The notes beneath the pieces are model-generated. The model saw nothing but the letters and a program-made list of their open reading frames with translations, did not search any database and was not told the origin of the DNA. DNA of 64,000 bases from Pocillopora damicornis. Lineage: Eukaryota. A program made the position numbers and the translations under genes. The DNA is taken from assembly GCF_003704095.1 (NCBI RefSeq), contig NW_020844146.1, positions 62,001-126,000 of the forward strand, read 5' to 3'. Positions 11,360-39,221 of the stretch are shown in pieces. The number at the start of each line of letters is the position of its first letter. Position 1 is the first letter of the stretch.

Positions 11360-14300
11360 TCAAATAAAACGAAAACTCCCACTGTACTTACGATTGGCTT
11401 CAGGAGGAGGTGATCCATCCCAAACAGTGTTCCTTTCTCCCTCAGTCGCTTCTTGTGCATCGCTGTCTAGTTCTGCAGCAGCACGTGACGCAAGGTAATT
11501 GGCAAGGGCTATGTAGATGTGCTCTCTCAAGACTGGATCAACGGAGGGCTCGGCGCTAGGAGGTACTGTAGTTATCACAATTGGGAAGATTATTTCGGTG
11601 TTGAAGGCCTTCTTCACGCGTACTTTAAACTACATAGAATTAACAATCAAAAAGTGTTGAATTGACATTGGAGAGAACCATTTATCAGGTGTAACCGTGT
11701 CGGATAGTTTACCTTCATAAAAGGAAGGAGAACAATTAAAGTGAGAAGTAAACAGAAAAGCAGCATGGAACATGAGTTTTTCTTCCCGCGGCAGTTTTAC
11801 GTCAACTGAATCAAAGTGGTCGGAAAAGGGGCTGGAAGTTGCACGCATTAGTGCTCAGCTGACTTACATTGTGTCTACTCGAGCTAAAAAGCGCCATTGC
11901 TGCCTTACTAATTTTCCTAGGTAGCTGGCGGTCCTGGGTTTACTTTAAAGCCTTAGTAATGAGCGATGGAGCTAGAAGATTGGTAAGAGACGCCTGGGAC
12001 GGAAAACGGGGGGGGGGGGGGGGGGGGAGAAACTATTTCATGTCCCTAGCTTCCCACGGCTTCACCGCGCGTTTTCGCGACTGTGCCGCTCAAAGTACCC
12101 ACAATGCTGTCAATGGCAAAGGTTACTGATGGTGATACCGACTCATCGGGAGAAAAAAGTTCCAAGGAGGAGCCTTAAAACGCAAAGGAACAATATCTGT
12201 AAAACTCTGGCCATGAAAAATACCCCTTCAACTATACCCTGTGAGACAAGCACTTACCCTGATTGCGTAAGAAATGTCAATACATCCGAATCCTTTAGTC
12301 GTTGGTTGTACAGGTGGAATGACGAAAGAATCAAGCTCGACATTGGTTTGATCTCCAGGTGCTAGTTCTTGTTCTTTCTTTAGGATGTAAAGCTTCTCTG
12401 TTACTTTACGTGTTGTAGCTAAGCAAAAAGGCAAACAGACAAAACTTAATCAAGGTATCTTCAAAAATGAAGCCACCATAAAAATATCCGAGCATCATCA
12501 TCATTTTCCCGATAAATGAACTTAATTTCTACGAGGGCTTAGGGATGAATGGTTGACAGTGTGGAGAATCAGCAATAAGACATTGGGAGTTAAAGGATTT
12601 TAAAAAAAAATTTTATGAACGTAGAACAAAACACGTTACATACCTGGTGAGGTCAGATAGGCCCGTAGATTGGGAGTAGAAACTTCCCTGCCCCTTAATC
12701 CCTCCTTCAAATTTTTCAATGTTTCATTCCCTGACCTCTAACATCCTAAGATCAGTATGCAATTTTCCATACTCCTCCCTATTCATTTCCCTTGGTACTC
12801 AAAAGAGAATTGGTTGCAAAATCGAGAGCTCCTTTCGTGGCGATCATTTGCTTCTTTTTCATGAGCTTAATGTCACTTTGAATTAGAGGCGACACTGTGA
12901 GGAGAAATTAGATGCTTGCCGCTTCTATTGGTGTAAAAGTTAATCCTTACCTTCCGGTGCCTTGTATAGCACTGTCTGTACCAGTTGCGCTTCAAAACCG
13001 ATAACTGTTTTGCTGCTTTCATTATTAACATGCCCAGATATCTTGACCTCCTGACCAGGGCAATAAGCAAGACGTTCTATGCGGGCTTTGGTGTGCAGCT
13101 GACCTGAAGGGCAACATGGCCATCCCAACATACGATCTTCTTGTTTCACTCTTGGTTCCTGTCGACAACAAATGATCAGAGAGTATCCAAAACGTGGTGA
13201 GCGATCGCCGACATGATTACCCTAGGACTTTCAATTTTGATTTCTTTCTTCCTTCGTGAAATCAATTATAAAATCAAACATTTCTTCTTAGGAAAACGTG
13301 CAGCATATGCCGTTATTCAATAGAACCAAAGAGTCATAGGGCAAAGAAAGAATCAGCAATGTGATCATACATCATGTTCAGGACTAAAGACAGTCCGTTA
13401 TACAATGCCTCATGCACTAGGGGAAACGAAAATGTAAGGGATTCTAATTTGGGTTTGTTTTCGATGCGCAAAGATAAGTTGCGGTGGCTCCCCCCTCGAA
13501 CCACATCTAGAAGAGTTCCCTCTTGGGCCTGAGCCAGTACTTACCAGGAATTCTGGATTCCTAGTCTGCACGCGCTCGACAATAACTAGCGGTGTGCGGG
13601 TATTGAGGTCAATTCTCCACGGTCGCTCCACCACAGCGTCTAACCAATATCGTACACTACCGTAGGTACCTTCAAATGATGTTGGTAATGCGGACACAGG
13701 AAGTGGGAATTGAAAAGGGAAATTGTAGTTTCCAGGTTGAAGCTTTACGTCACTTCCGTTTTGGAAAGGTGCTATAAAGAAAATAAATTAAACGTTAGTT
13801 TGGATCGAAATGAATAAGATTAAGGTCAAATTAATAAATACAGATATTTTCAGAATATGTTAAACGCTGCCGAGGAGTTGATGTAAGAAATTGTAACGCG
13901 CTTTTATTGGTTTGATTGATCGCCAATTCGCCAGTATTAACTGTCGGGGTTTTTTTCCTTTCTCTTTCGAGATTCGATCGACCAAGCGCTGATGGGTCCA
14001 GAAAGATAATTTAATTTCATCTAGCTCTTGAAGAACGACCTTCCAAGCAAGCAAAGTTATCGAATAGCTACATCCTTATCAAAAGGTTGAGAAAACTGAG
14101 CTGATCGTGATTCTACCTCTTTCCACTTTTTTAGTTATGTCTAATGATGAAAAAGGGAATGGAGACACTGAAATCTATTTTGAATGTTTAGTGTGTCACT
14201 ATTGCCATTCTCATGAAAAATCAAATTGAGAATTTTCGGAGTCTTGATCTACCTGCTACTTATCTCTTTGATTAACTGTTATGGCTGCTTGAAAATGGGC

Positions 14301-15904: not shown

Positions 15905-18900
15905 ATGCCGCAGAATTTTACCAGAATCACAGCTGAAGATGTTCAATATTATCTTCTTGTAGAATTATTTGACCAAGGCAAAGATGGATTCGACCTCACC
16001 GTTTGCAATGGCGATCACGTTTGGCGCGAAACAGGTAAATAGTCTGAAAATATGGAACCAATTATCATCTTGATGAAGGATTCCTCTTTATTCAGCCATG
16101 TATCTTGTTTAGAATCTGGAAATATTGGCAATACGCTTGCATTTTTGGTAGTCAATTTACTGGTTCCTTTTGTAATTAGTTCAGACAACCTGATTCAGGT
16201 AAGGTCTAATTAGGAAAATGACAACAAGTTTAACTGAATAATGGCTGTAAATATATGAAAATCATATATGTCCACTGCGGTTGAAGAAACGAATATAGAA
16301 GCGATCCTCGCAGCTATGAACACTACTAAACTAGTAGTTGAAAACAAGGTCTAAAAAAAAATCCCACCCCATGGACCATGATACCCCCTGTCTGTGTTTG
16401 TGACAGTTGTAGTATCCACTTTGCCTTCACAGCCAATCATGTTGGCTGCTGTTAATTGTATTCACTTAAAAGTCTAGGAAGTGAAGTTTTTCTGCCATAA
16501 ACCATGCTGAAAACCCCTTTGGAAACATATGCTGTATTACAGAAGGTTCCAGTGCTCTTTTCCTCATTTATCATAATATGATTTCAATTCCTTTTTTTTT
16601 TGGTTGTTGTGCTTTTGTTTTTTTCTACTTTGAGATATTCAATGTGACAGTGACTGATGGCAGCTTTAGATAAAATTGAAAATATGGCTCTGAATCTCAG
16701 GTGATGACTGAGATCATTTTTAACATCAACAGCATCTTTAGTTGGTGATTATTTCTATTGTTATCATGAACTTAATGTGCAATTCAGGGGAGATGCTGTG
16801 AGGAGAAATTAGATGCTAGTCACTTTTAAGGATTTACTTATGTTGTTTATTTTTTCAAGTTGATTCATTGACAGTTGAATCTATGGCAAAGACTGCTGAT
16901 ATGAGTGTTACTGAATTTGCTGATCAAACAAGCAGAGCACTGACAGGCCAGACAACAAGTCAGGATAATTTTGTCTTTCAAGCCAAGCCTAAAGAGACAA
17001 AGTTACAGGTTGGATAAAACCTTTTGAGGCATTTTTGATTAATTACATTTGGGTATCTTTAGATATCTGTTACAAATGACTAAGATGGAATAAAACTGAG
17101 TAGTTGATTAAGCTATTTCCATTTCCTGAATTTCGATAAGAATAGAAACGGTAAGTGATTGATACAGACTTGATGTGGTGAGATGCTGAAAAAAGCTTTG
17201 TTCCCACAAGCCAGATTTTTGTTTTATTTTAGAAGAGAAACAGCAACATAAGTTAATATATATTTAATTTTTGTAAGCCCAGCTTTTTTAAAAGTTCAAG
17301 ATGGCTTGAAACTCTCACTGGAAAAAGATAACGGAGGTTCTAAAACAGCGTGATGTGATTTACAAACTAAGCATGTAAGATCTTCAAAATATATTATTGA
17401 TATGTGTGCCAGAAGGAGAAGCAGTAAATTTAGATGTTATCTACAACCTACTATAGATTCTGATTTCTCAATACTCAAGTCCAAATACTTTACCTTAAAG
17501 GGTCTTTTATCCAATTAAAAAAATTTTAGCTTTCCATTCAAATAACACGAAGAAAGGCAGGGAAAAGTATGCTGGGTACGAATGCAATGTTAGGGAAAAC
17601 AGAACCAGTTATGGTTTATCAGGATTGTCAGCAACTTGACTTGAGGGAAACTACAGATAATGAGATATCTTCTAATGATTTTTTTGCTTTTTAGTTCTCT
17701 TGGAAGATGCATATTGGTGATGGTGTTAAGGTAGTGAAAAGTTCAAAAGTCCTACAGACTTAGTATTGTTCATAAACAGTAATGATTAATGTATATTCAA
17801 GGTGTTCACAGGGGATATATTAAGGCCTAGATAAACTAAAGATATAATTATTTAATAACTGCATAAATAAGATTGAATTTTATTTACACATACATGTATA
17901 TGACACTTCATTGTTGACTTAAGATATGTATTTTTTGAAATTAATATACATACATTATTCTGTCTCATTCCAGTTTCAACTGGGTTCTCTGACTTTGCCA
18001 AAAGTTAGTGACAGTGTTCAAGTAATCAAGAACATGTTTGATCTGGCTGTAAACCAGATGACACAGTTAAAGGTAATTGTAACTGATGTGTAATTTACAT
18101 TTAAATGAAACTGAAATGAATGACTAATGCTCTCTTTGTTACCTGAATATAAAATTAACAGATATAGAATGGCACTAGATGGCAATTGTTTTCATAGACT
18201 TGGACTGCATGATACTTCATCCTCTAGAGTCCATTAACCCTTTAACTCTCAGATCAAATTTGTAATTCTCCTTACTGTCAACCATACAATTATTATGTTA
18301 GTTCAGAGAATTTAGTATTGAGTCAACTTATTATTTCCAAATTGATATTTTTCTTTGTTCTCATCACTTATCTGGTTGATATTGTATTAATACTGTAATG
18401 AGAAATTCTGTCTTGGTTACTTATGGGAGTTAAAGGGTTAAGTTTCACTAGCACATTTAAGTTACAAAGTAGAGCCACCCCCTCTCCCCCCCTGTCACTG
18501 TAATTTGTCTAACTGTATACTGATAAGTTGCAGTGCCCATTATACACCTGGGTGTGGAAACGCTCTCTGACTAAAGTGTGTTGTGCAAGAACACAACATA
18601 AAGATCAGGCAAGGGCTAATGAATATAGACTTATGCAAGCCATTTAAATTCCAGCTTACCAACCGCTAAGCTATGGCATAAACTGTCATAATTTAGGTCT
18701 CTTTTTCAAGAACTCTAATTAATGTAATCCCCATTGCAATAATTGTACTTGTGAAAATGAAAGATATAAAATAGCAGATTGGTAGCTATTTTTTCCAGTA
18801 GATTTTATTGGCAACTTGTTCATGTGTTCATACATGTATGTTTATTATCTTTTAGCAAGAAATGTCATCTTTGAGATCTGACAATACCAGATTATCTTCG

Positions 18901-23916: not shown

Positions 23917-26900
23917 TTAGTTTTTGACAATCATTTGTTCAGGACCAATAGGAAACGATGCTGTTGTGTTCTCGGTCCCAGTCTCCGTAATAATCAAAGT
24001 ATCGTGCTCTCTGTACCCGCCAGCTCCAGGTTTTCCTTCGGGAACTACAATCATTGGTTCCATGGTAATGATCATCCCAGGCTCCAGAACTGTGTCCACG
24101 TGCTCGAGGAACTCTAAGCCCCAGTCTCTTCCATAGTAGTGAGAAAGAACTCCCGTGGAGTGTCCGTAGCCAATGACTCGGTATTGCAGAATGTCGTGTT
24201 CCATATAAATTTCATTCAGTTCCCGTGCAACGTCACCGCAGCGCATGCCTGGTTTGACTAGTTCCAGGCCTCTACGGTGAACCTTGTTATTGATCTCCCA
24301 GAGTTCCATATGTCGATCTGATGGCACGTGATCAAAGAATAACGTCCGCTCTAGAGCAGCATAGTTTCTATTACAAAACAAAAATACCAGCAAAATAAAT
24401 AACGTTAGAAAATCAGGCAAAAAAAAACACTCGGAAAAAAAACACTCGAGCGCTCCTAGCAGGAGTGTTGATCCCAGTATCAATCCATGCCACTTGTTGG
24501 CTCGGATACACTGAGCTGTAAGAGGCTCTTGCTAGCTTACGTATTGACTCGATCCATGTGACAAACATCCTGCATACTTATATTCACGTTCTGGGAAGTC
24601 GCAATGCTTTTGGACAGCGTTATGTACCAAGGATCGCAGGCTCTGACGAGATATTACTAGCATACTACGTTCGACCTGGCTGAATGTTTTGCGTATCAAA
24701 GCGGAGCCTCCCGCCGATCCGATTTAGTCATCATTTGTATAAGAACCTTTATGAATGTAAGAGAAGACATCTACTTTCTGAATAGATAGACTTACCCTGC
24801 TATCATTGGAAAGCAGTTCAAACTCAGAATATCGCCTTTTTGAACTCGTCGACTTGTAGGAAAGTTGTGTGCACCGTCTGTGTTTATTCCTGACTGCAGC
24901 CAAGACCACGCTAGATAGAAAAGAATGTACGCACAATGAGTAAAGTGTAATGAAAGGGGAGTAGATAACTCCATGATGGGTTATACAGGGAACTCCTCAA
25001 GTGAGGGGTACTTATCTCAGAAGTAAAAACAGGAGTAAAAATTTCACGAAGATATCTCTCACTTGAGTAAAAGAACTTTGGTATGCACCCCAGTAACATC
25101 CTTGAGTGTTGGGGTTATTTTTTGGGAGTTAAGTTAGATTTTTTGGGAAGGGCCCATCAATAAAGTTCAAAAAAAGCGTAATTAAAAATGTTCTGTTAAA
25201 GATCAAACAAGAATTCCGATAACTTACTATCTCGGATATCGATTTGTGGAAATGTTACAGCGACCTCCCGCATCATCGCACTATTTGAAGCGATCACCAC
25301 TTCATACTCTGGGACACCCTCGTGTAAGGTCTTGATTCCTGCATACGCCCCAAGCTCTGCTATTCGAGAGCCTTGACGGACTATTTCGACCTCCTCTGGA
25401 GACTTCACTCGTCGAATTTCCATGGCTGCATCTGCTACGTCGACAAATTTGGCATGCGGTAAGGCCTCTGAGAAACTTTGCAGCGAGGCTCCCATATCTG
25501 GAAACTCTACACCCACCGTCTTTGCAGACTGTAACTGATAGTTTTACAAAGAGGCGATAAATAAGAAAATATATACATACTCCTATGCAGGCATCTAAAA
25601 TCAAGAAGTAGTCTAACTAATGATCTTGGAAAGGCAACTCGCAAATTTTCGCTTTAAAGCTGCAGATTCCCAAGTAGAGGGGTCAAACGAGATAAAAAAA
25701 AAGCTATTTTTCCAAACAGTCCTAAGAGGAAAGATAATCTGCAATGCGTGGAGGACATTTGAAATCAAAGTGCAACCATTGATTTCGGGAGATGAAATGG
25801 AATTAATTTTACTTGAGAGATTATTCCTAGTTTTATATGAGTGGTTTCGCTGTATTACAGGTGGAAGACAACACAAAGTCAAACATCTGATTATTCGTGT
25901 TATTAAACGAATTTTATCTTCTTTTCGATACCTGTTGTTGCATGGCGTAGTAAAAATTTTCCTTTTGCCAGTTGGTGTAGCTAATGTTATCGCAAGTTCC
26001 TCGTCTCCATGGAAACCCATAATCTACAGCTGTAAACAGACAAGACCCATCAGTCTCAACAAAAAAATTCTACTTGAAAAAAAAAACTCTTTACTTTAAC
26101 AGTAAAGTTGTTAATTGAACAAGGACATTTGACAAGTTCTTACATGGCGTAATTGTCAATGCTTTTTCGTCAGTAATGACCAAGGCGTATTGCCGTCCCA
26201 TGGAACAGTATAGAAACTCGCTGAAGTAATAAATGTTGTAGTAAGAAGTGAACACGCATGCGTCAAGGCCATTTTTCTCCATGTAAGAACGGATACTGTT
26301 CAGACGCCGGTTCATTTCTTCAGAAGAAAATAGTGGTTGGGTCTGAAAATAGATTTTACATACACATAAAAGAACGTGAATCATGTAGAAATAAATGAAT
26401 GGAGGAATGTAAGATTTTTTAATGGCGATCGACTCATTGAGAAATAAACCGAGAAAGTAAGATAGAAAGACGAAGGAAGGAAAGAGAGTTTTCAGAATTA
26501 CCGTTACGAATAGGAAAAAACACTTTTGCGCTATAAAATAGATTGAATACTACGTAAAAGTAGTCCACAGTTTCAAGGTCAATTTTATTAGTTCACGGCG
26601 TTTTCTAGGGTCGTTTTTTTGTACCTTTCGTGTCAATCGTCGGAAATTCCTTCTTTTAGCGTCACAAACCACGCAGTAATTAATTATCGCGGAGGGGGGA
26701 GGGGGGGGATGAGGACTTTGGGGGGAATCACATAGATTTCAGGGGGGGAACAACAGAGTATAAAAAGGAGACTATAGAAAATTGACCGCCAGTGATGGAA
26801 GATCACGAGAATATTACGGAGCCTTATTCGTCGCAATTGTGGTACCCGAGCACAATACGTTTTCTTCGCACCCTGCAATCTTCTTCTACTCAGATTAAGT

Positions 26901-27167
26901 TTGAGGGGTCCACGCACCCTTCACCTCGGGATAGTCCTCCCGTTATCAGGTTATTAGTGTGTATTATTCTGAGGTCAGGGCTTCATTCTCAGACCTGTGC
27001 CTTTTTAAAAGACAGAGAGCTTTTTGAGGGGTGACCGGCCGCTCTTAATTGATAATTTAGCTAACCTTTCCGCCATTGTGAAGCTCGAGGGTTCTCGGGA
27101 AGTAATCGTGTTTCCCGCGAAATAAAACTGGTGTTAATAGGTTCTTGAGTTTGCGCAGTGTTTTCAT
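23917..27167 (-). CDS. Creatinase-like protein (creatine amidinohydrolase family, M24 pita-bread fold), divergent paralog, 6 exons
   Basis: Exons 27167-27066 (MKTLRKLKNLLTPVLFRGKHDYFPRTLELHNGGK), 26342-26144, 26029-25932 (VDYGFPWRRGTCDNISYTNWQKENFYYAMQQQ), 25534-25228, 24910-24796 and 24367-23917; all GT-AG and in frame. Motifs QSGINTDGAHN, GDILSLNCFPMIAG, ALERT, GYGHS.G.LSHYYGR, MEPM, GAGGYREHD. Confidence 0.92.
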
Positions 27168-28240
27168 CCTAGCTAACGAATCTGTAAAGCAACCACACGA
27201 TGGCTTTAATCGCAACAAAATTATGTTTAGATTAAAATAAGTAGACTTAATTTGAAGTCCATAAACTCACACGGGGTTAGAGTAAATTTTGAATGGGTTT
27301 CAGTTATATCACTGGGAAAGGTTTTTCTCCTCTTTCCTTTCGACTGAAAACTAACAGATGAAACCCCACAAACCGTAAATCAAAGACAAAATTTAACTTT
27401 TATCTTAATCCTGAGTAACGCTAACCAGCTGACCCAGACTACCCTGTAGACAATCCGTCCTTTAAAACAACAGCTAGCATCGCTGCCCCAATCCCTCGCG
27501 GCTCGTTCTCCTTCCGTCTTCTCTTTCGTGCCTCGTTCAGCACTCGAAAATGACGAAAGCTCGCTAGCAAGCCATCTTCACAGTGTTCAGGCTGAAAAGT
27601 TGGAAAAATCGTAGTCTACATTTCATGTTCAAAGTGTTCGGTCCGAAATATGTCACTGGTTTATACTGTGTATGCCACTATTCATCAGCAGGTCATAGCG
27701 TGACATAGAAATCTCTTGGTTTCGCAACGCTAAATGCTAATTCAGGCAAAGGTTTGAATAAAAAGTGTGAGCTGTGTATTTTTGAGAAATCCTTAACTTT
27801 ATAACGAATCCCAAGTGGGGCTTAGTTTTCAGTCAGTTCGCCAGCAAAAAACATCGGGGAATTGGGTAATAACAAAAATAGAAACGGCCTTAGAACCGTC
27901 CGGTGTTAGCCAGCCAGGTTTTACAAACGACTCAAACAGACAGTTTTCATGAATTTTGTACAAGGCTTCTACTGATATTTGTCACACATTAAGATCGATT
28001 CTTAGCGAATATTTAAAAGAAAACATGCTTTTTACATCTCCTCAGGTCACCTTTGGACACTGAAAAAAGAAGACGAGTCCGCTGGTAGACAAATAATATT
28101 ACAGGAGACATTATTAATCTTTCGTTCAACTGCCGGTCAACTGCAGTAGATTGCATGTCAACGGTACCATTACAATCTCGATGTATATCAGGCACTTATG
28201 TACGGACATTAATTAACCTTAGGCCGAGCTACAAACCTGA

Positions 28241-28560
28241 TTACTGGGTAACGTGGATTAGAGATGGAGAGTTCGCAAAATAGTACCAGAGCCAAGTTGC
28301 GTTACATGCCTGGATAAGAATGAACAATGAATGAGTTGCCAATTGGATCCTATTGTTTACGCACAGATTTCTGGGATCGCCACGAGGAAGAAACTCACTA
28401 GAAGGAAATGTATGGCGAAAGTTTGTTCCGACGTCCAGATAAACGATTTTAGCGAGAGATTTTCGCTTTTTCGCCGCTCTTTTATCAGAAATTGATTTGG
28501 GTAATGCTGATACAAGGGAGGCGTAAGTTTTTGTTTGAAAAACCATGTAATATGTAGTAA
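28241..28560 (-). pseudogene. Unknown protein-coding fragment, paralogous to 29650-30100(+)
   Basis: TKTYASLV...SLAKIVYLDVGTNFRHTFPSSEFLPRGDPRNLCVNNRIQLATHSL aligns with the + strand copy, with many synonymous differences. Confidence 0.5.
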
Positions 28561-28759
28561 AATCTACCGATTAACTTGTCTTCATGCGTAAGGTTTATTG
28601 TGAATTTGACATCGTGTAATAACTATAAATCGCCTAGGAATAACTCAACCAAGCCGTTCCAGATTTTTGTACTTGTGTTAAGTCTCAGTACTTCCAGCGT
28701 TTTTCGTGGCTTGGTAAAACAAAAGAGCGCGAGAATAGTTGCTTGAGAATTAAATATTA

Positions 28760-29200
28760 TTCCGGTACATTAAAGTGATGAATCACCTATACTGCTTCTT
28801 TGTTGTGATGAATGTGAACGAATCAGTGTTGATAGTTGGCTCAAAGCTGAACCTTTTCTTCTGTGACGAAGAGTAATACAAATTGGTCCCTTAAGGAGTG
28901 ATGCACAACCGATGATATGTCCACAGTTTCTGCCGGAGTTCCCGTGATCTTGCTTTTCTTGACAAGATCCTTCAAGGAGTTCGAGAAGAAAAGTTGCAGC
29001 TCAAAGACCTTTGGATTCTTCTCAAACAAGCTATCACTTGAGCGAGGGATTTCCTCGTGTTTTTCATCGCTTATTTCATCCTTTCAGAGAGCAACAGCTC
29101 GGTAAAAATATTTTCCATCTCCGTGGACAACGACTTCTCTCCTTAATAGAGGTATATTTTCAAACGTCGTAATTTGTTCATTAAATACGTTAACAAGCAT
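28760..29200 (-). pseudogene. Decayed OTU-like cysteine protease domain, probably transposon- or virus-derived
   Basis: Minus strand reads REVVVHGDGKYFYRAVAL*KDEISDEKHEEIPR...GTPAETVDI...HHFNV, cf. OTU consensus GDGNC.YRA, G.W, HY/HF. The catalytic Cys is replaced and there is an in-frame stop. Confidence 0.6.
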
Positions 29201-29350
29201 GAAAACAGGCAGTTCATATATAAATACAACTGAAAAGACTTAAATTAGTTATTTCCTAGCGATTCCTGGCTAGTTTTGTAATATTTCGAGACCATTAAGT
29301 GATGACGATTTCACAATAGACCTTACGCAAGGAGAGAAGTTTTTCGGTGA

Positions 29351-29643
29351 AGAAATGTAAAATTGTTTCCGTGTTTACATAGCCTGCTGTAAACACGCGG
29401 GAGGTTGGGAGAACACGAGATAAGCGTAGGAAACCACGACGCGAAGCGGAGTGGTTTCCAGCTTATCGAGTGTTCTCCCAACCTCCTGCGTGTTTACATC
29501 AGGCTATGTAAACACGGAAACCATTTTACATTTCTTTCATAAAATAACTAATGAAAGAGGAACGAAAACCGTGTTTACATACGCTCATGTAAAATGGTTT
29601 TATGGCCAATCAGAACGCGCCTACTATTTGAATTATTTTATAA
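29351..29643. mobile_element. Non-autonomous element with a ~185-bp near-perfect palindrome
   Basis: 29351-29535 folds on itself (AGAAATGTAAAATTGTTTCCGTGTTTACATAGCCTG...CAGGCTATGTAAACACGGAAACCATTTTACATTTCT), followed by a GGCCAATCAGAACGCGCCTACTAT...TTATTTTATAA tail. Confidence 0.75.
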
Positions 29644-29649
29644 TGTTTT

Positions 29650-30100
29650 TTATAACATATTTCGCGGTAATCCCAACAAAAACTTACACTACCCTCGTAT
29701 TAAAATATCTTTATCCATGTATGATAAAACTGCGACAAAAAAGCCATAATCTCTCGCAAAAATCGCTTTTTTGGACGTCAAAACAACCTCTGGCCATACG
29801 TTCCCTTATAGCGAGTTACGATGTTTGCCCCGTGGCGATCTCAGAACTCTTTGCGCAAACGCAAGGATCCGATTACTGGCAACTCATTCATTACCTCTCT
29901 GCTTTGGCGGATCAAGTACAAAGGTCAGGAGGGTCAAGATCCACTCCTCCATCGCATCGCATCTTTTAACTTCTTGCTTGAAACGAAAATTCTTCCAACG
30001 ACAGGATCTCTTATTACAGCTCAACTTGAAGTATCCAAAATTTACTTACCCTTTCAAGCTTATAGTGCGCGCCGATGTGAAAAGAAATCTGTCTATTCCT
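29650..30100 (+). pseudogene. Unknown protein-coding fragment, paralogous to 28241-28560(-)
   Basis: TKTYTTLVL, then a frameshift, then SLAKIAFLDVKTTSGHTFPYSELRCLPRGDLRTLCANARIRLLATHSL. Confidence 0.5.
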
Positions 30101-30725
30101 AAACATAATCCGGACCATCCCTTGGCCTTTCCGATCAAAAGAGCCTGGGTTCTCCATTTATTCGACTATTTACTTTTCTCGGTAGAAATTAAGAAATGGG
30201 CAAATACAGTGATTATATTGGTATTCGCCTTACTCTGTGTGACAAACACAACGTGGTTTCAGTCGTTTTCATGTGAGACGAGTCAGCCTTGCACTGATCC
30301 TAAGAGGGGGAGGGGGATCGTGGAAAAAGAGACGAGTGACAGGCTTTTGACACTTCCCCCTCGGCATTTTTTCATTTCTGAACGATGCTATAAGATACTT
30401 TCTGTTCTGCAAGAATTTCTAGTCACGAGAGCTTCAAAAACATCTAAAGTTCCATGTGGAGGAACGAAGTGGAGATATGAGGGTGCTCCTAAAGAAGTAT
30501 GTAGATAAAATATATGAAAGGGAGAATATGATTAAATATGTTTTAATAACTCTGTCTCTACGGTCCCTATGAGGTGACTCATTTTTTACGGTCAGCTCAT
30601 TAGTAAAATTGGTTGTGAGTCCTATATCGCTGTGTAGAAATTCAAGAGTAGAAATCCTATAAGAAAAGCCATAGTAACAGCGGCTTATGGCTTGTGGCTT
30701 ATAGATTGCAATTAACTACCAGGAA

Positions 30726-33507
30726 TTAGTTTTTAATGATATTGTGTTCTGGTCCATATGGGAACTTTGTAATATTTTCGCTATCTGTTTCCTTGACAAC
30801 CAGTATATCGTGTTCTCTATATCCACCTGCACCAGGCTCCCTCTCGGGTACTGTAATCATTGGTTCCATGGATACCACCATGTTTGGATGTAACACCGTC
30901 TCGATATCTTCGCGGATTTCCAGCCCAGCTTCACGTCCGTAATAATGAGAAAGAACGCCGAAGGAATGACCGTATCCAAACGTACGATATTTCAGCAAAT
31001 CGTGTTCGAGGTATAGCTCGTTCAGTTCGTTAGCTATGTCACTGCAACGCGCGCCTGGCTTTATGAGCTCCAGGCCCCGACGATGAACCTTGCAGTTGAC
31101 TTCCCAGAGTTCTATATGCCGGTCTGATGGCACGTGATCACAAAAGAGTGTACGCTCAAGTGCTATGTAGTATCTAGGGAAGACATAAAGATACAGAACT
31201 GAGAATTGACGTGCAAAGGGGCTAACTGGAAAGAAACACAGTAGTCGATTAATGCTCCGGCTTGCCATGCCTGTTCAGGCATTGTGGAAAATTATTATGG
31301 CTGCGGGTTGCCATATTTGTCCAGCAGCTCGGAATAAAGGGATAGAAAACGGAGATCTGATAATGATGATGCTGCAACAACTTTTCAACTAAAAATTAAG
31401 TTTTTCAAAAACATATTCATATGTTTTTCTTACAATTTCTGTTTATCATCTCCATAGAGAAAGGACTGGAACCTAATGAAGCCAGACCTGTCGATTCCGA
31501 GATTACCGCACAAAGCATTGGACCTCGGAGTCTTCCGTTGTAAATAAAGTCTTTTAAATCAAAGCTATATGATTTATACTCGAGTAATTACTGCGCTTGG
31601 CCCTCTGTCGCAAGTGTCCCAGATAGCAGACACCTGACGTTAAGCAGATTGCATAAAAAATTTTAAACAACAACTTACCCAGCTATCATAGGAAAGCAGT
31701 TCAAACTGAGTATGTCTCCCTTACGCAATCGCCGCGTGGTAACTGGATTATGAGCACCATCGGTATTAATTCCTGATTGGAACCAAGTCCATGCTGAGAA
31801 ATACAAGAGCGACAATAAAATTAACCAAAAAACCCTGCAACCCTGCGCTCCACATTTTTCTTGTAATTGAAGACTCCCAAGAAACAAAAAGAAAATGAAT
31901 AAAGGAATTTAAAAAGGATGAACAATTGAAACATACTATCTCGTATTTCAGAATGTGGATATGTGTCGGCGATCTCTTTGACCATCGCGTTTGTTGACGC
32001 CAAAGCAATCTCGTGCTCAGCGGCACCTTCCTTGATTGCCTTAACAACTGCCTCTCCTCCAAGATCAGCGATACGTGCTCCTTGCTTTATAAGTTCAATT
32101 TCTTCGGGAGATTTAATCATGCGCATTTTCATGGTCGGTTGACTGACATCTACGAATTTTGCATAAGGTAAAGCATCGGAGAACTTTCGGTGACTGTCGA
32201 GATGGACCCAATCAAACTCCAGACCTACTGTTTTCGCGTCGCCAACCTTGTAGAGATAATTGACGTCTTAGTGACTGCTAAAAAGGGAAAATATCCTGCG
32301 ACAAATTTTACGATCACAGTAATCCTCATGCAAACCTGTTGTTGTACAGCGTGATAGTAATTGTCTCTTTTCCAGTCCGTATAGACGATGTTCTCACCGA
32401 ATGTTCGGCGCCACGGCTGACCGTAGTCGATGCCTGCAAAATGGAGAAAAATCGCGTTGCACTTTTCGAACAAATGTCCAATGCCTCGACAGTTTTCGTG
32501 AATATCATGCAAACGCTGATAGCAACACGTCCAAATTATTTCTTTTTACACCNNNNNNNNNNNNNNNNNNNNNNNNNNNNNNNNNNNNNNNNNNNNNNNN
32601 NNNNNNNNNNNNNNNNNNNNNNNNNNNNNNNNNNNNNNNNNNNNNNNNNNNNNNNNNNNNNNNNNNNNNNNNNNNNNNNNNNNNNNNNNNNNNCCCCCCC
32701 CCTTCCCACTCCAAGGCGATCAATGATTACTACCAGAACCTTACTGAAAAATAAAATTTTAAAAAATAGGGAAAAGAAGAAGATTATACAGCAAAGCTTA
32801 CCAGCAGAAACACTTGTCGTCTTCGACGGGGTGACAATGAGCGCATACGGCCGACCAAAGTAACAGTACAGGAAATCGCTGTAATAATGTATGTTGTGAT
32901 AGGATGTAAATACGCATGCGTCAATCCCGTTTGTCTCCATATGGCGTCGAATCATGTCCAGACGGCGTTGCATTTCTTGGGACGAGAAGGTTGGTTTCAC
33001 CTACAATTGGAAAAGCGTGATGATGAGTAACTGTTGGCTTGGGTATGAGCCCTTGTACACTCTTAGCTTGTTAGTTCGTTTCCTCGAGATGAGAATTGTT
33101 TGCCTAAAACGACTCAGTCTTTTAGCTTCTGGCCTCCTGTCTTTAATAAGATGCTAAAATTTCAATTTCCGTAAATTAATTATATAACACATTATTACGC
33201 ACACAGGTAGAAGAAGAAAGTTTTTTAGGGTCGGCAAGCTAGGAGACTGGGTATATATTTTTTGCGTTTTTAGCCGTGACTTGTTCAGTAATCAGATCTT
33301 ATACCTCATTGCAAACAGACATTGCAAAGACAAAGAGCAAATTGCACGCTTGACAAGAATAACATGAACACAAACCTTTTCGCCATTATGACATTCAAGT
33401 GTACGAATGTCTTTGTGATCGCTCAGCACATTCAAGCTTAACAACCGTTGAAAGACTGGAACCAAAGTTCGTCGAGAAAAGCGTACGTTTTTGGTCAAAA
33501 GAAACAT
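30726..33507 (-). CDS. Creatinase (creatine amidinohydrolase, EC 3.5.3.3), canonical paralog, 6 exons, with a putative mitochondrial presequence
   Basis: Exons 33507-33376, 33000-32802, 32433-32336, 32246-31937, 31793-31679 and 31173-30726; all GT-AG and in frame. Near-colinear with recalled Pseudomonas creatinase: FTSYHNIHYYSDFLYCYFGRPYAL, GQPWRRT...NIVYTDW.RDNY, MRMIKS.EE, TWTWFQSGINTDGAHNPVTTR, YRTFGYGHSFG.LSHYYGREAGLE, MVVSMEPMI, ENITKFPYGPEHNII. Confidence 0.95.
32553..32693. other. Assembly gap (N run) within creatinase intron 2
   Basis: Run of N flanked by poly-C. Confidence 1.
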
Positions 33508-35036
33508 CTGAAAAGAAGACATGGGAATGGAAGTAAATCGCGTGGGATGGTTCACAATGTCCCAAAATCCGTGGTACAACTACTAATCTCAAAATAAACT
33601 GGGTTATGGCGAAAGCATGACACATTTTATAATGGACTTTCGTTCAAACAAGAAGTCCGTCTAAATCTCACCACCAACAGAACTTTTTCAATTCTTTGAC
33701 AAACGTTCTGTCTCCAGATATTTAATTGTTTGTGTCTTCTTTTAATCCTGACAACTTTCGGGTAAATGACGATTTAAGATAAGTCAGGGATTCGAAAATA
33801 TCACTCAGCCGAAACTGATTAAATTCTTGAATTAAGAGTTCGAAAGAAAGATGGATATTGTCATAAAAAAAATGGTTGGGAGGGGGGGTGGGGGAATGGA
33901 GGAAAATTAAAATCAGTCTAATTTCCACTTAATCATCATATGCAATCACTTGGTGCTTTGATATTCTGCTGCAGTCTATTTTTTGGTCAAAAATAACAAT
34001 TGATGATTGGTGAAAATTGAAACTAAAGGTTAACGCCGTATCTTACGTGACAAACAATGGGTAACAAAAACAAAAAACAAAACAAATTTATTTATTTTAG
34101 CAATTAAAATACATATCTAACAATCCCGACCAGCGAAATTCATCGAGGCGGGAGGGAAACAAACATTAAAATAAATTCTTCAATAACAAGTTTAAGTAAA
34201 AAGAGGAAATGACTACGAAAGCATGCACATATACGAACAGTGAAAAACAGCAAGATAAGTTAACGATAAGCCAATTAGGTATTACATGTTACAACTAGAA
34301 TAAAATTAAACGCGAAATAAACAACAACAACAACAAATGAAGCTAAAAAGATTGTAATTTTCTAAATTTATCAATTTAAGTATGGACGTCAAAATAAGTA
34401 TCCTCTCGCATCAAAATGTTCAGCAGCTGTCTATGAAATAGTCTTTGAAATTTCTACTTAGGTAGAGCACGAAGACAGATGGGACCCACTCTTAAAATAT
34501 AATTTTTCATATGTTCTGTTCTGGAATGTTTAGATAGAGATTGCCAGCCGCTAACAACTGCATAATCAGTCATAATTTATGCGTCTCCGCTCTTCTATTC
34601 ATCTCACACCCTTACGTAATTGTTTTTTTCGTATTACTTGCTCAGTTTTTGGGTCCTGGTAATTGAGAATTGTACTTGAACGAAATGATGATGTTTTAAG
34701 AAATCATTTAAGTGCGTGTCAAATTTAGCTTTTAGGATTAAAATAAAACCGGGGCTGCAGACAGATCAGAGGCTCTAAAACGAACGGACCGATCGCTGAA
34801 AACTACTGATGCATTAAATAATTACGCGTTTACAGACGAACGTTTATGCAATAAAACATTCAGTCGAGGTAAAGGGTCGCTAGATTCACTGCATATGTTA
34901 CAAAAATTTAACTTTCTTTACATTACTTCTGGGACCGGTTGCATCATACGCGTGCGGAAAGTATTTCGGCTAAAATAGGTTGATTCCAGCGCGGCCCTTT
35001 GTGCTTCAATTGAAGTTAGAGTACTTCTATTGGGGC

Positions 35037-35445: not shown

Positions 35446-37579
35446 GGCTGATTTGTGTGCGTTACAGCGATGACAAGCGTCCCCGGGGAGGCTGAAGGCA
35501 GAAGCTTCCACTCGAGGCTTCGTCGCTTATCGCTTAACGCACTTAAAAACAGTCAAGCGCACACAAAACCGCTTGTTACGCACGCCACATGGAAGGCGAT
35601 TTTTCATGTAAAAGTGAAAGAAAGCAGAATCTTTAACAGTACGATGATTTTATGCATCAAATTCGATTTAGGTCTGATATCTTAATACTCATTGCATGTT
35701 CATTGCAAATTGCCACCTTGAATTCGAAACCTCAACTCATGAAAATCGCTTGAAGTTTGTGGAACAGCCATGAAAGTGCCTGAGAATCACGGCAAGAGGA
35801 AACATGGAAATAATATGAAAAATAAACGTCAACATCGTGCTGATGAGCAATTCGAGATTCGCCAGAGTAAAGGCAACTTAATGGTTACTGACGAAACTTC
35901 AGATGAGACCGAAGTCAACAATCTACCTGTGCAAGGAAAACCATCGGTGTTTCCGGTCTGTGATTTTACTTTTCTCTCTTATAGCCCTTACTTTTTAAAG
36001 ATTTGCCGGAATCGAAATGACTCGTTGAAGCAACAAGCAAAGCTGTGTTTGTGCGAAGATTGGCTCTGTTGACTAAGATTTCTTCTTAAATCGAAGCTTA
36101 CCTCGTTCAGTTGCGTGCTGGAGTCACGAACGTTCTTTTTAGGCAAGAAAGGTACGCACGGTCGCAGTCAAATAAAATCGATAGTGGAAAGAGATGGTCT
36201 GCACCATACTACATTATGCATTCAGTTCTTGGATAGAGAAAACAATGACAAAAACATTACATTTCCACTGGGAAAACAGATTTGTTTTACAATAGTATGG
36301 AACTGTGCGGAAATTTTACCAAGTCTTTTTATACGTATTTGTCGCGTATTGAATGGTTCTCAAGGACAAACGCAATCACTGTTTTTAGTATGTAATTTGA
36401 GACCGGGTTTAGAGACGGTCAAATTTGATGTACGTCGTAGTTTGGAGCCTTTCAAAGATTTCGATGGCCACTTTGATCCTTCTTTAACAGCACTGACCAA
36501 ACGCTCTTTAATGGTGCATGTGTTTGAGACCGTTTACGGTCGAGAAAAGGCCTGTTGTTGCGTTATACAGCGTTACTATTGCATACTATTGTTACTATTG
36601 TAAATCTGCTTTCATAAGTAAAAGCAAATTAACTTATCGTGAGTATTGTATGGTAAATCTACTATCTCGATCATTGACTGAAGGACAGTTGAATGTGAGC
36701 CATGAAAGGAGTCACTTGACCAATGAATAACTCTACACTGCACACGGCAACACGCCGGGAAAGCCAGAAAGCAAAAGGCAGTCGATCGTTAAACGGTGTT
36801 GATAGGCTTGTGCGACTCCTGCCTTTCGCTTGCGTTTTAAATCTTTTGACCTGAAAGCTTAGCTGTTATTAGGATACCCTCTAATGACTTTCGTTTGCGA
36901 TGTGATATTAAGGGTTAGTTTTAAGGTGTCATTCCCCCATCTGTATGTTCTTGAGGTTTAGCAAAGCCCGTTGAGATTGTGTTACAAAAGGTGATATTTG
37001 CATGTGTGCGCACTATTTTTTTTGTTTGTTTTCAAGTATCAGTCTCTCTCGCAGAAAATAACTCCAGAGATACGTTTCTCAAACCCCTATTCTAAGTATT
37101 CTTTATTCTTTAAGCATATTTGAAACTCTGTACGTTTTTTATTAAACGTTGAGCGTGACAAATTTGTTCTTAGGAGGCGTAAGGCTTCTCCTTTCGCGAA
37201 TCCCTTATCTACGCTATTAAATGTATAATATGAAGAATAGTTCGTGTATTAGAAGGTTGCTGTCTCTTTATAATGCGTTTGCATGACAAGGGTCGATTCC
37301 CCGTTAAATGGCTCGCGAATTTGATATTATTCACAAAGCCATCGGCTGTGAGTGTAGCTGCTGTCAAATGAATAGATTCTCGGGCATGGCTGCAGTTTCA
37401 ATTCTTTCTGAATCTCTTCAGTCGCCTCCTAGCAACGAATTTGTCACGGAGGAATGACAGGAGTCGCACAGGCCCGCAAACACTTTTAAGATTTCAAAGG
37501 AACGGTAAAAGACAGTGAATCCCCATTTACATTCCACGCTTATTCACGCTATCTTGCTGCCACCAGAGATATTCACTCG

Positions 37580-38047: not shown

Positions 38048-39221
38048 TTACTGAATATTTTGTTGCATCGGTAGTTTTCAGCGATCGGCCCGTTCGACTC
38101 AGAGCTTTCAATCTTTATGCAACCCCGGCTTTATTTTGGTCCTAGAAGCTAAACTTGACACGCACATGGATTGCTTAATTTAAGATATCATCATTCCGTT
38201 CAAGTATAATTCTCAACTAACGGGATCCAAACTGATTTGGAATGTAACCTTTTTATTTCATCGAAAGCACAGCGTTTTCGTCATGTTCGCACAATGCGCT
38301 TGTAACCTCTATCGCCAATGTTCCCTAACCAATCGAATATTAGTCGAGGTTCATGCGTTCAAAATTTTCATGGGTTGCTCAAAAAAAGTATCAAAAGTTT
38401 AAAGTAAGCCAAAAAATGGATATATTCGCCCAATTTCTGCTGTCTTAAAGGTCAATGGTCGCCATCAGATGGAGCGAAGTTAACCACGAGAACAGAGTAA
38501 AGAACAGTGATACTCACGGGTGCAAAAATGTTGCGACATCAGATACACGTTGATGTGACTTAGAGAAAAATATTTAAGTACATTTTGTTCAAAATTGAAC
38601 TCACCATATGACTGGAAGATTTCACGGAGCACTGAACCACACCAGAGAACATGCGTCACGATATGCCTGTTTAGGCGAAAACATATTACCATTATTGAAA
38701 GCAACTTCATTGTTTGATGATGTGTTGATGTTAACGTGATGTAAATATTCATCACGCAAACAACTCCCAATACATCGAGTTTGGTGCTCGTTCATCCTAC
38801 TCTAGATACACCGATTATAAATCGAAAACTCGATTTTTTTCAAACAAAGTTGCAAAGGCTCGCAGTTTTAGAATACTCGAATAATTGCACAAAAAAAAGA
38901 AAAAAAAAAGTACGCAAACAAGCTAAGATTCATCTGGTAAATGACAAACTATCACTGGTTCCTTCCTAACGAACCAGTGTTTCTCATTTAAAAAGCGTGT
39001 ATAAAAAACGAATATTATTTTGAGCATAATTTGGAAAAGTTGGGCATTGCTAGTAGCATAAAATGCGCTACTTTCGCTTTTTAGGAGCTCGCCTTTTATC
39101 GCTCTGTTATTTGTTTGTTTTCGTTGGTTTATTCATTTGCTTTTTCATCTAACATTTTCATTTTATCTTTTTCTAATCATTTTTTTTTGTCCTCTCTGAT
39201 TCAAGACATTTTATCTATCTC

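What the first reader, a model, noticed from the sequence alone, without database searches (positions are those of the whole stretch)
23917..33507. Two intron-containing bacterial-type creatinase genes in an animal genome: candidate animal creatine-to-sarcosine-plus-urea pathway
Seen: two tandem minus-strand genes, each with six GT-AG exons at identical positions and phases and an intact frame. They sit between XRCC4 and alpha-arrestins, so bacterial contamination is unlikely. Established: creatinase (EC 3.5.3.3) is classically a bacterial enzyme that hydrolyses creatine to sarcosine and urea; vertebrates lose creatine as creatinine instead. The 30726-33507 copy keeps the residues I recall for P. 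putida creatinase (Phe62, Arg64, His232, Tyr258, Glu262, Arg335, Glu358). Inference: an ancient horizontal acquisition or a patchily retained gene, intronised before it duplicated. It would let the animal recover nitrogen and one-carbon units from creatine, which may matter for nitrogen recycling in a symbiotic coral.
Basis: partly seen in the sequence, partly recalled or inferred. Interest (0 to 1): 0.85.

Follow-up and report, generated by a model that had tools for sequence, protein, structure and literature searches.

The report
Two coral creatinase genes, old animal family
The coral genome really does carry two intact, intron-containing genes for creatinase, an enzyme usually thought of as bacterial. 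They belong to an old gene family shared with sea urchins, acorn worms and amphioxus that databases already label "creatinase-like", so this is an under-studied animal enzyme rather than a coral-specific gene capture.

Summary
Two tandem minus-strand genes, A (27167..23917, 421 aa) and B (33507..30726, 433 aa), each have six coding exons, identical intron sites and phases, GT-AG borders and open frames.

- **Assembly gap:** it lies inside intron 2 of B. PolyA RNA contigs from three of the four studies laid splice straight across it, and all five B introns are seen as joints.
- **Identity of B:** every B exon tested (2, 5, 6) has Pseudomonas putida creatinase (1CHM) as best solved match; the last exon is about 75% identical.
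- **Identity of A:** A is 62% identical to B and has changes beside the active site. It is under strong purifying selection (omega 0.02-0.10).
- **Age:** three intron sites, with phases, are shared with sea urchin, hemichordate and amphioxus "creatinase-like" genes, and a fourth with amphioxus. The intron-bearing gene therefore predates the cnidarian-bilaterian split and is not a coral-specific transfer.
- **Prior annotation:** B is 98.8% identical to a Pocillopora meandrina protein that UniProt names "Creatinase".
- **Literature:** I found no paper on animal creatinase.
- **Open points:** enzyme activity, mitochondrial targeting, the substrate of A and the expression of A are inferred or untested.
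- **Earlier scan note:** copy A was flagged before (s1-783756).

The parts
33376..33507 (-). Gene B, coding exon 1. The ATG is at 33507, directly after an AG acceptor. Encodes an N-terminal extension of about 30 aa plus the first conserved residues, ending ...NGEK, phase 0.
   Evidence: RNA joint 33376->33000 in 4 runs
32802..33000 (-). Gene B, exon 2 (start of the Creatinase_N domain; holds Phe62 and Arg64).
   Evidence: Pfam PF01321; best solved match 1CHM, E 1.5e-21
32553..32693 (.). Assembly gap (N), lying inside intron 2 of gene B (intron = 32434-32801).
   Evidence: RNA contigs of X1, X3 and X11 join 32802 to 33 across it; protein alignments are contiguous
32336..32433 (-). Gene B, exon 3.
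   Evidence: RNA joints on both sides
31937..32246 (-). Gene B, exon 4 (end of the N-domain and start of the M24 'pita-bread' domain).
31679..31793 (-). Gene B, exon 5 (holds catalytic His232 and Asn249).
   Evidence: 35 of 37 residues identical to 1CHM 218-254
30726..31173 (-). Gene B, exon 6 with the stop codon (Tyr258, Glu262, His324, Arg335, Glu358, His376). RNA contigs continue at least to about 30552 as 3' UTR.
   Evidence: 1CHM E 4.6e-75; Pfam PF00557; contig X1 record 3
36102..36146 (-). Gene B, alternative 5' exon with a GT donor at 36101. It has no ATG in this genome (TTG where related transcripts have ATG), so here it is untranslated leader.
   Evidence: 87% match to the N-terminus of transcript-derived P0424; sequence
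38605..38652 (-). Gene B, alternative 5' exon with its own in-frame ATG (adds 16 aa) and a GT donor at 38604.
   Evidence: 16/16 match to the N-terminus of transcript-derived P0430; sequence. RNA contigs run 62-86 nt beyond 33508 without lying on 33509-33650
27066..27167 (-). Gene A, coding exon 1 (ATG at 27167; short basic N-terminal extension).
26144..26342 (-). Gene A, exon 2 (Creatinase_N; Phe62 replaced by Met, Arg64 kept).
   Evidence: Pfam PF01321; 1CHM alignment
25932..26029 (-). Gene A, exon 3.
25228..25528 (-). Gene A, exon 4.
24796..24910 (-). Gene A, exon 5 (His232 and Asn249 kept).
23917..24367 (-). Gene A, exon 6 with the stop codon. Tyr258, Glu262, Arg335, Glu358 and His376 are kept. 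Tyr257 is Asn, Phe326 is Thr, and the loop after Arg335 is remodelled.
   Evidence: 1CHM E 5.9e-65; omega 0.02-0.10 against other corals

Best explanation
These are two host-encoded paralogues of creatinase (creatine amidinohydrolase, EC 3.5.3.3; the metal-free branch of the M24 'pita-bread' fold) in a Pocillopora-type coral.

Copy B is the conservative one. It is transcribed, spliced and polyadenylated, and it keeps the catalytic His232 and all known creatine-binding residues. It most likely hydrolyses creatine to sarcosine and urea. Its basic, acid-poor N-terminal extension, which bacterial enzymes lack and all animal homologues have, suggests import into mitochondria, where animal sarcosine dehydrogenase is located.

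Copy A arose by tandem duplication after the introns were in place and evolved fast at first. It has since been held under strong purifying selection, with substitutions next to the substrate pocket. It is probably an active amidinohydrolase, possibly acting on another guanidino compound.

The family is old in animals. The intron-bearing gene existed before cnidarians and bilaterians split, and it survives in corals, echinoderms, hemichordates and cephalochordates. Whether the stem lineage first obtained it from bacteria is unresolved.

Shown here: gene structure, expression of B, family membership, residue conservation, shared introns, selection on A. Inferred: enzyme activity, substrate, mitochondrial location, physiological role.
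For: Gene structure and expression:
- Both frames are intact, with identical intron sites and phases and GT-AG borders.
- All five B introns appear as CT..AC joints (GT..AG on the minus strand) in contigs of polyA or oligo-dT RNA runs from four studies.

Family membership:
- Every exon tested (B exons 2, 5, 6; A exons 2, 6) has creatinase 1CHM as its best solved match: E 4.6e-75, 1.5e-21 and 4.2e-20 for B, and 5.9e-65 and 2.8e-15 for A. Prolidases and ectoine hydrolase score far lower.
- Pfam finds Creatinase_N and Peptidase_M24.
- B keeps Phe62, Arg64, His232, Tyr258, Glu262, Arg335 and Glu358. Both copies have Asn249 and Ala260 at the positions where M24 peptidases carry metal-binding Asp.

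Comparison with other genomes:
- B is 98.8% identical, without gaps, to Pocillopora meandrina 'Creatinase' P0426 and to ORFs of 433-449 aa called on short (~1.5-2 kb) Logan contigs, which I take to be assembled transcripts.
- RefSeq 'creatinase-like' proteins exist in Apostichopus, Diadema, Lytechinus, Ptychodera, Glandiceps and Branchiostoma. The Strongylocentrotus protein is 'uncharacterized' in RefSeq and named Creatinase by UniRef.
- Intron sites and phases at alignment columns 119, 325 and 364 are shared by both coral genes and by the urchin, hemichordate and amphioxus genes. Column 185 is shared with amphioxus. The chance probability is about 1e-7, and still below 4e-4 if only a tenth of sites can accept introns.

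Phylogeny and selection:
- Corals form a clade (99/97) with A outside the B-type group. Deuterostomes form a clade (85/90). Holding all animals together costs 0.36 lnL, AU p = 0.50.
- For the A-type last exon, dN/dS is 0.02, 0.06 and 0.10 between three coral genera.

Genomic context:
- The 234-Mb genome holds only these two copies.
- G+C of the locus matches its flanks, and the neighbours are animal genes.
- The genome also has intron-split urease exons and four FAO_M (sarcosine/dimethylglycine dehydrogenase-type) loci, and many phosphagen-kinase loci.
Against: - No enzyme assay exists for any animal member that I could find, so the substrate is inferred from sequence alone.
- The mitochondrial presequence is judged only by composition; no predictor was available. 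Alternative 5' exons change the N-terminus.
- Expression and splicing of copy A were not tested, because the single read-laying run went to B.
- The tree backbone is a polytomy, so animal monophyly is allowed but not shown by sequence. Only 6% of bootstrap trees recover it.
- dS between coral genera is close to saturation, so the omega values are rough.
- Bacterial sampling for the tree came from best hits to three queries and is not exhaustive.
- Creatine synthesis genes were not established in this genome. There is only one weak amidinotransferase-family hit, and GAMT was not searchable. The source of substrate is therefore open.
Confidence: 0.8

Rival explanations
1. Recent or coral-specific horizontal transfer: a bacterial creatinase gene entered a coral ancestor, gained introns there and duplicated.
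For: - Very high identity to bacterial enzymes: about 70% over the full length to P0383 and about 75% in the last exon to 1CHM.
- Coral sequences sit in an unresolved polytomy with marine proteobacterial creatinases.
- Textbook knowledge treats creatinase as microbial.
Against: - Three intron sites with identical phases are shared with sea urchin, hemichordate and amphioxus genes, and a fourth with amphioxus. The chance probability is about 1e-7.
- Coral B is as similar to hemichordate proteins (70%, P0314) as to bacterial ones.
- All animal proteins share an N-terminal extension.
- The AU test does not reject one animal clade.
- G+C is host-like.
Confidence: 0.03
2. Ancient transfer: the gene is old in animals but was first captured from a marine bacterium by the animal stem lineage or an earlier eukaryote, rather than inherited from the first eukaryotes.
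For: - Animal and bacterial sequences differ by very short internal branches.
- The family is huge in bacteria: at least 8000 scored candidates in each search.
- Among eukaryotes I saw it only in a few marine animal phyla, one foraminiferan (Bolivina) and one long-branch sequence of unknown origin (P0025).
Against: - Creatinase evolves very slowly, so high identity alone does not prove transfer.
- The backbone is unresolved and the root unknown.
- Eukaryotic sampling here was incidental, not systematic.
- This reading is compatible with the best explanation and concerns only the ultimate origin.
Confidence: 0.45
3. The proteins belong to the creatinase family but do not act on creatine. They would hydrolyse another guanidino or related compound, or have lost catalysis. 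This applies mainly to copy A.
For: - A carries Phe62->Met, Tyr257->Asn and Phe326->Thr, plus five changes in the 14-residue loop after Arg335.
- The last-exon changes recur in A-type genes of other coral genera.
- A sits on a long branch, 0.87 against about 0.25 for the median.
- Relatives of the same fold have shifted substrate, such as ectoine hydrolase DoeA.
Against: - B keeps every listed substrate-binding and catalytic residue. It is 95% identical to 1CHM through the His232 segment.
- A also keeps His232, Arg64, Tyr258, Glu262, Arg335 and Glu358.
- Strong purifying selection argues against loss of function.
Confidence: 0.3
4. Artefact: bacterial contamination, a mis-assembly across the N gap, or a pseudogene pair.
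For: There is an assembly gap within the span. The Desmophyllum A-type copy shows a locally disrupted frame, and none of its other exons lie within 10 kb.
Against: - The gap is intronic and is bridged by spliced RNA from three studies.
- Ten GT-AG introns, open frames of 421 and 433 aa, and animal neighbours on one contig.
- An independent assembly of a sister species gives the same protein.
- Omega is far below 1.
Confidence: 0.02

Closest known systems
Pseudomonas putida creatinase (creatine amidinohydrolase, PDB 1CHM); also the creatine amidinohydrolases of PDB 1KP0 and 7YTO
   Same: - Two-domain build: Creatinase_N plus the M24 pita-bread domain.
- About 75% identity in the last exon and 95% through the His232 segment.
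- All catalytic and creatine-binding residues are kept in B.
- Asn and Ala stand at the positions of the M24 metal-binding aspartates.
   Different: - The coral genes have five introns in the coding region plus alternative 5' exons.
- They carry an N-terminal extension of about 30 aa that bacteria lack.
- They are polyadenylated.
- Copy A has substitutions beside the pocket (Phe62Met, Tyr257Asn, Phe326Thr, and the loop after Arg335).
Predicted animal 'creatinase-like' proteins: Pocillopora meandrina (UniProt 'Creatinase', P0426), Strongylocentrotus purpuratus LOC582474, Lytechinus, Diadema, Apostichopus, Ptychodera, Glandiceps, Branchiostoma
   Same: - B is the orthologue of the P. meandrina protein (98.8% identity).
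- The deuterostome genes share three to four intron sites and phases and the N-terminal extension.
- Tandem copies also occur in Ptychodera, with four proteins on one contig. The Branchiostoma locus shows the start of a second copy.
   Different: - Deuterostome genes have an extra phase-1 intron after the YYGREA motif and lack the coral-only phase-0 intron at column 220/222.
- The A-type paralogue was seen only in corals.
- None of these proteins has a published activity that I could find.
Other M24B enzymes with a Creatinase_N domain: prolidase (Xaa-Pro dipeptidase), aminopeptidase P, ectoine hydrolase DoeA
   Same: Same fold and domain order. They are detected as weak matches with E values between about 1e-13 and 1e-4.
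   Different: Scores are 50-60 orders of magnitude weaker than for creatinase. Those enzymes bind two metal ions through Asp/Asp/His/Glu/Glu, whereas the coral proteins have Asn and Ala at the two Asp positions, as creatinase does.

Membership tests
Creatinase (creatine amidinohydrolase, EC 3.5.3.3) | Domain order: Creatinase_N followed by the M24 pita-bread domain, about 400 aa in total | tested here: met
   PF01321 on exon 2 and PF00557 on exon 6 of both copies. The orthologue P0426 carries both domains. Bacterial P0003 residues 27-412 are covered in order by B exons 2-6; exon 1 is placed by eye and by the full-length match to P0426.
Creatinase (creatine amidinohydrolase, EC 3.5.3.3) | Closest relatives are biochemically characterised creatinases rather than other M24 enzymes | tested here: met
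   1CHM, 7YTO and 1KP0 are the top three hits for every exon tested, with E down to 4.6e-75. The next family (prolidase) reaches 1.4e-08 for B and 3e-13 for A.
   B has all seven. A has six of seven, with Phe62->Met, plus neighbouring changes Tyr257->Asn and Phe326->Thr.
Creatinase (creatine amidinohydrolase, EC 3.5.3.3) | Metal-free active site: Asn249 and Ala260 replace the two Asp metal ligands of M24 peptidases (the equivalence is recalled from the literature, not recomputed) | tested here: met
   Both copies read SLNCFP (Asn249) and have Ala at position 260 in alignments to 1CHM. The mapping of these positions onto peptidase metal ligands rests on established knowledge.
Creatinase (creatine amidinohydrolase, EC 3.5.3.3) | Hydrolysis of creatine to sarcosine and urea; homodimer with a shared active site | not testable with these tools
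   This needs an enzyme assay. The dimer was not modelled.
Horizontally acquired bacterial gene in an animal | Animal sequences nest with support inside a bacterial clade | tested here: inconclusive
   The backbone is a polytomy. Animals form two clades whose union is not rejected (AU p = 0.50).
Horizontally acquired bacterial gene in an animal | Restricted to one animal lineage (a recent event) | tested here: not met
   Orthologues with shared introns occur in echinoderms, hemichordates and a cephalochordate.
Mitochondrial matrix enzyme (N-terminal presequence) | Basic, hydroxylated, acid-poor N-terminal extension that is absent from bacterial homologues | tested here: inconclusive
   The first 30 residues of B have 4 Arg, 1 Lys, 1 Asp and 0 Glu. 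All animal homologues have extensions of 25-100 aa of similar make-up. No targeting predictor was available, and alternative 5' exons alter the N-terminus.

The most novel reading that the evidence does not exclude
Animals ancestrally had a complete, mitochondrial route for breaking down creatine: creatinase, then sarcosine dehydrogenase, with the urea going to a host urease. This route survives in corals, echinoderms, hemichordates and amphioxus, and to my knowledge vertebrates lack it. In stony corals a second, fast-diverged but strongly conserved paralogue (copy A) has become an amidinohydrolase for a different guanidino compound.
Probability: 0.3. Interest if true: 0.65.

Novelty: new member of a known kind. 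Interest (0 to 1): 0.42.

Why it matters
**Creatine breakdown in animals.** Textbook accounts treat creatinase as a microbial enzyme and say animals lose creatine only as creatinine. Coral and sponge microbiome studies assign creatine breakdown to bacterial or archaeal symbionts (for example bioRxiv 10.1101/2020.12.31.424895, which calls creatine a coral osmolyte and attributes creatinase to Ruegeria). A conserved, expressed, intron-bearing host creatinase in corals and several deuterostome phyla means the animal itself may degrade creatine to sarcosine and urea. That would change how nitrogen and one-carbon budgets of these holobionts are read, and how sarcosine pools in sea urchins are explained (PMC12735097).

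**Shared introns as an age marker.** The locus is also a clean case where shared intron positions settle the age of a "bacterial-looking" animal gene when the protein tree cannot.

**Copy A.** The practical novelty is limited because the genes are already annotated. The open part is biochemical, especially for copy A.

Tried and rejected
- **Search with bacterial query P0003.** It returned only bacterial relatives and was useless for eukaryotes.
- **Alignment of all twelve exon translations to a full-length protein (A1).** MAFFT scattered the short rows, so I rebuilt a smaller alignment (A2) for the third search.
- **Joined models and database searches.** All database searches used single exons by reference or public protein ids.
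- **Where the joined models were used.** The joined A and B models were built only inside scripts from window.fa. They were used locally for blastp against proteins already fetched and tblastn against loci already fetched. They were also used for MAFFT alignment, the tree and the gapless comparison with P0426; the exon-6 dN/dS used direct window slices.
- **Rfam scan of the intergenic stretch 27200-30720.** No hits, so the very deep RNA coverage there is not a known RNA family.
- **Creatininase (PF02633).** Absent from the genome.
- **Amidinotransferase family.** Only one weak hit, so creatine synthesis could not be judged. There is no specific Pfam model for GAMT to search with.
- **Literature.** No study of animal creatinase. 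The only animal use of the name was a crab qPCR marker whose function is misdescribed (PMC13351845).
- **Not run.** I did not model the dimer or predict a structure, because about 70% identity to solved creatinases makes that uninformative.
- **Rejected after testing.** Contamination, an exon hidden in the gap, and a coral-specific transfer.

Full report
**Observation**

The minus strand between 23917 and 33507 holds two tandem genes. Rebuilding the coding sequences by script from the window gives two open frames.

| | Copy B | Copy A |
|---|---|---|
| Exon 1 | 33507-33376 | 27167-27066 |
| Exon 2 | 33000-32802 | 26342-26144 |
| Exon 3 | 32433-32336 | 26029-25932 |
| Exon 4 | 32246-31937 | 25528-25228 |
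| Exon 5 | 31793-31679 | 24910-24796 |
| Exon 6 | 31173-30726 | 24367-23917 |
| Protein | 433 aa | 421 aa |

Neither frame has an internal stop. All ten introns are GT..AG. Intron sites and phases (0, 1, 0, 1, 2) are the same in both copies, and exons 2, 3 and 5 have identical lengths. The two proteins are 61.6% identical. The genome (234 Mb, 4393 contigs) has no further copy.

**The assembly gap**

The gap (32553-32693) was tested first. It lies in intron 2 of B (32801-32434).
- Contigs of RNA runs X1, X3 and X11, which come from three studies, join 32802 directly to 32433.
- A full-length bacterial creatinase aligns as residues 27-92 and 92-136 on the two sides of the gap.
- The Pocillopora meandrina orthologue aligns to the model over 433 of 433 residues with no gap and five mismatches.

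Nothing coding is missing.

**Host origin and expression**

- G+C of the locus (0.38-0.42) matches its surroundings.
- An XRCC4 domain exon lies at window 16859-17002. Arrestin_N exons lie at 13410-13697 and 47080-47436, and an ion-channel exon at 833-1345.
- RNA runs from several studies hold about half of the sampled words of 30700-33600, which is roughly the exonic share.
- I laid four polyA, oligo-dT or cDNA runs from four different studies on 27700-33650. All five B introns appear as joints with CT..AC ends on the plus strand, that is GT..AG on the gene's strand.
- Some low-depth contigs retain intron 5.
- The contigs stop matching at 33508, directly at an AG acceptor in front of the ATG, and run on for 62-86 letters that do not lie in 33509-33650.
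- N-termini of ORFs on short Logan contigs, presumably assembled transcripts, of near-identical corals locate two alternative 5' exons in the window. One is at 38652-38605, with its own in-frame ATG (+16 aa) and a GT donor. The other is at 36146-36102, also with a GT donor, but with TTG where the relatives have ATG, so it is untranslated here.
- Copy A's expression was not tested.

**What the genes are**

I searched exon by exon, by reference. The joined models were built only inside scripts and used locally.

- Every exon tested has the three solved creatinases (1CHM, 7YTO, 1KP0) as best matches.

| Exon | E value against 1CHM |
|---|---|
| B exon 6 | 4.6e-75 (about 75% identity) |
| B exon 2 | 1.5e-21 |
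| B exon 5 | 4.2e-20 (35 of 37 residues identical) |
| A exon 6 | 5.9e-65 |
| A exon 2 | 2.8e-15 |

- Prolidases, aminopeptidase P and ectoine hydrolase follow far behind.
- Pfam finds Creatinase_N and Peptidase_M24.
- The 1CHM chain index plus one equals the published residue number.
- Both copies also have Asn249 and Ala260. From established knowledge of the fold, these positions replace the two metal-binding aspartates of M24 peptidases, so both copies are of the metal-free creatinase type.
- Copy A keeps His232, Arg64, Tyr258, Glu262, Arg335 and Glu358. It has Phe62->Met, Tyr257->Asn and Phe326->Thr, and five changes in the 14 residues after Arg335.

**Is copy A decaying?**

No. A-type last exons occur in other corals (P0004, P0009 and P0014; P0014 is from Desmophyllum pertusum). 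They carry the same A-specific substitutions. For this exon, dN/dS is 0.02, 0.06 and 0.10 between three genera. dS is near saturation, so the figures are rough. In the tree, A sits on a long branch (0.87) as sister to the B-type coral sequences inside a well-supported coral clade (99/97). This pattern means an old duplication, fast early change, then constraint.

**How old and how widespread**

- A whole-library HMMER search with B's last exon found 298 representatives at E <= 1e-10.
- Look-ups and two word-index searches showed named animal proteins. RefSeq names them 'creatinase-like' in Apostichopus, Diadema, Lytechinus, Ptychodera (four proteins on one contig), Glandiceps and Branchiostoma.
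- RefSeq calls the Strongylocentrotus protein uncharacterized and the Pocillopora meandrina one an unnamed product; UniRef names both 'Creatinase'.
- A foraminiferan (Bolivina) sequence also appeared.
- B is 98.8% identical to the P. meandrina protein, so the window comes from a Pocillopora-type coral. It is about 70% identical both to bacterial creatinases and to hemichordate proteins.
- I fetched the urchin, amphioxus and hemichordate loci and mapped their introns exactly.

| Alignment column | Phase | Genes sharing the intron |
|---|---|---|
| 119 | 0 | Both coral genes and all three deuterostome genes |
| 325 | 1 | Both coral genes and all three deuterostome genes |
| 364 | 2 | Both coral genes and all three deuterostome genes |
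| 185 | 1 | Both coral genes and amphioxus |
| 447 | 1 | Deuterostomes only |
| 220/222 | 0 | Corals only |

- The chance of such overlap is about 1e-7. It stays below 4e-4 even if only one site in ten can take an intron.
- In the maximum-likelihood tree (52 rows, LG+C20), corals form one clade and deuterostomes another. The backbone is a polytomy with marine proteobacterial enzymes.
- Forcing all animals together costs 0.36 log-likelihood units, AU p = 0.50.
- Together these results place an intron-bearing creatinase gene before the cnidarian-bilaterian split. That rules out a coral-specific transfer. Whether the stem lineage first took the gene from bacteria stays open.

**Likely mechanism**

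- *Shown:* B is an expressed member of the creatinase family with a complete active site.
- *Inferred:* B hydrolyses creatine to sarcosine and urea.
- All animal proteins have an N-terminal extension of 25-100 residues that bacteria lack. It is rich in Arg, Ser and Leu and poor in acidic residues. This looks like a mitochondrial presequence, but I had no predictor and the isoforms differ.
- The genome holds intron-split urease exons on a contig of more than 740 kb. It also holds four FAO_M loci of the sarcosine/dimethylglycine dehydrogenase type and many phosphagen-kinase loci, and no creatininase. Downstream steps are therefore possible.
- Creatine synthesis could not be assessed.

**Comparison with what is known, and novelty**

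The enzyme kind is well known from bacteria, and the animal genes are already annotated automatically. I found no paper that describes or assays an animal creatinase. Coral and sponge papers assign creatine breakdown to bacterial or archaeal symbionts. A crab nutrition paper uses a 'creatinase' transcript as a marker and misstates its reaction.

**Verdict**

This is a real, correctly read locus and an ordinary member of a known enzyme family. It belongs to an old but little-noticed animal clade. The open and more interesting part is the conserved, diverged paralogue A and the untested biochemistry.

Noticed in passing
window 28341-28620 and 29294-29874; inner hairpin 29350-29425 / 29461-29536: The spacer between the two genes holds two inverted copies of a repeat (arms 75-81% complementary) and a 76-nt hairpin (93%). 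RNA contig depth at 29292-29689 is 100 to 300 times that of the creatinase exons in all four runs, with many loose ends. This looks like an abundant transcribed repeat family (MITE- or SINE-like). There is no Rfam match.
   Followed up: partly
window 28522 -> 30836 (+ strand): A GT..AG joint on the plus strand skips 2313 nt and appears in contigs of two RNA runs (X2, X3; side 29 nt). It would be an antisense or unrelated plus-strand transcript ending inside the last exon of gene B.
   Followed up: no
window 31174-31678: Low-depth RNA contigs in three runs run through intron 5 of gene B unspliced. This is either retained intron or pre-mRNA, or DNA carry-over.
   Followed up: no
L004:11168-11647 (Desmophyllum pertusum): The A-type last exon is present (82% identical to copy A), but a stretch of about 12 residues around the MEPM motif is out of register. 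No other creatinase exon lies within 10 kb upstream. This may be a decaying copy or an assembly or annotation problem in that genome.
   Followed up: partly
L002:10527-10661 (Branchiostoma floridae); Ptychodera flava contig CM083792.1: The creatinase-like gene is tandemly repeated in deuterostomes too. The first exon of a second copy starts about 2.9 kb after the amphioxus gene, and four distinct Ptychodera proteins map to one contig.
   Followed up: partly
G000:C2813:796072-797871: Two phosphagen-kinase catalytic domains lie back to back in one 759-aa open frame without introns. This is a multi-domain arginine/creatine-kinase-type gene in the same genome.
   Followed up: no
window 833-1345 (-): An exon-sized open frame with an Ion_trans domain (E 4.7e-14), so a cation-channel gene sits at the window's left edge.
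   Followed up: no
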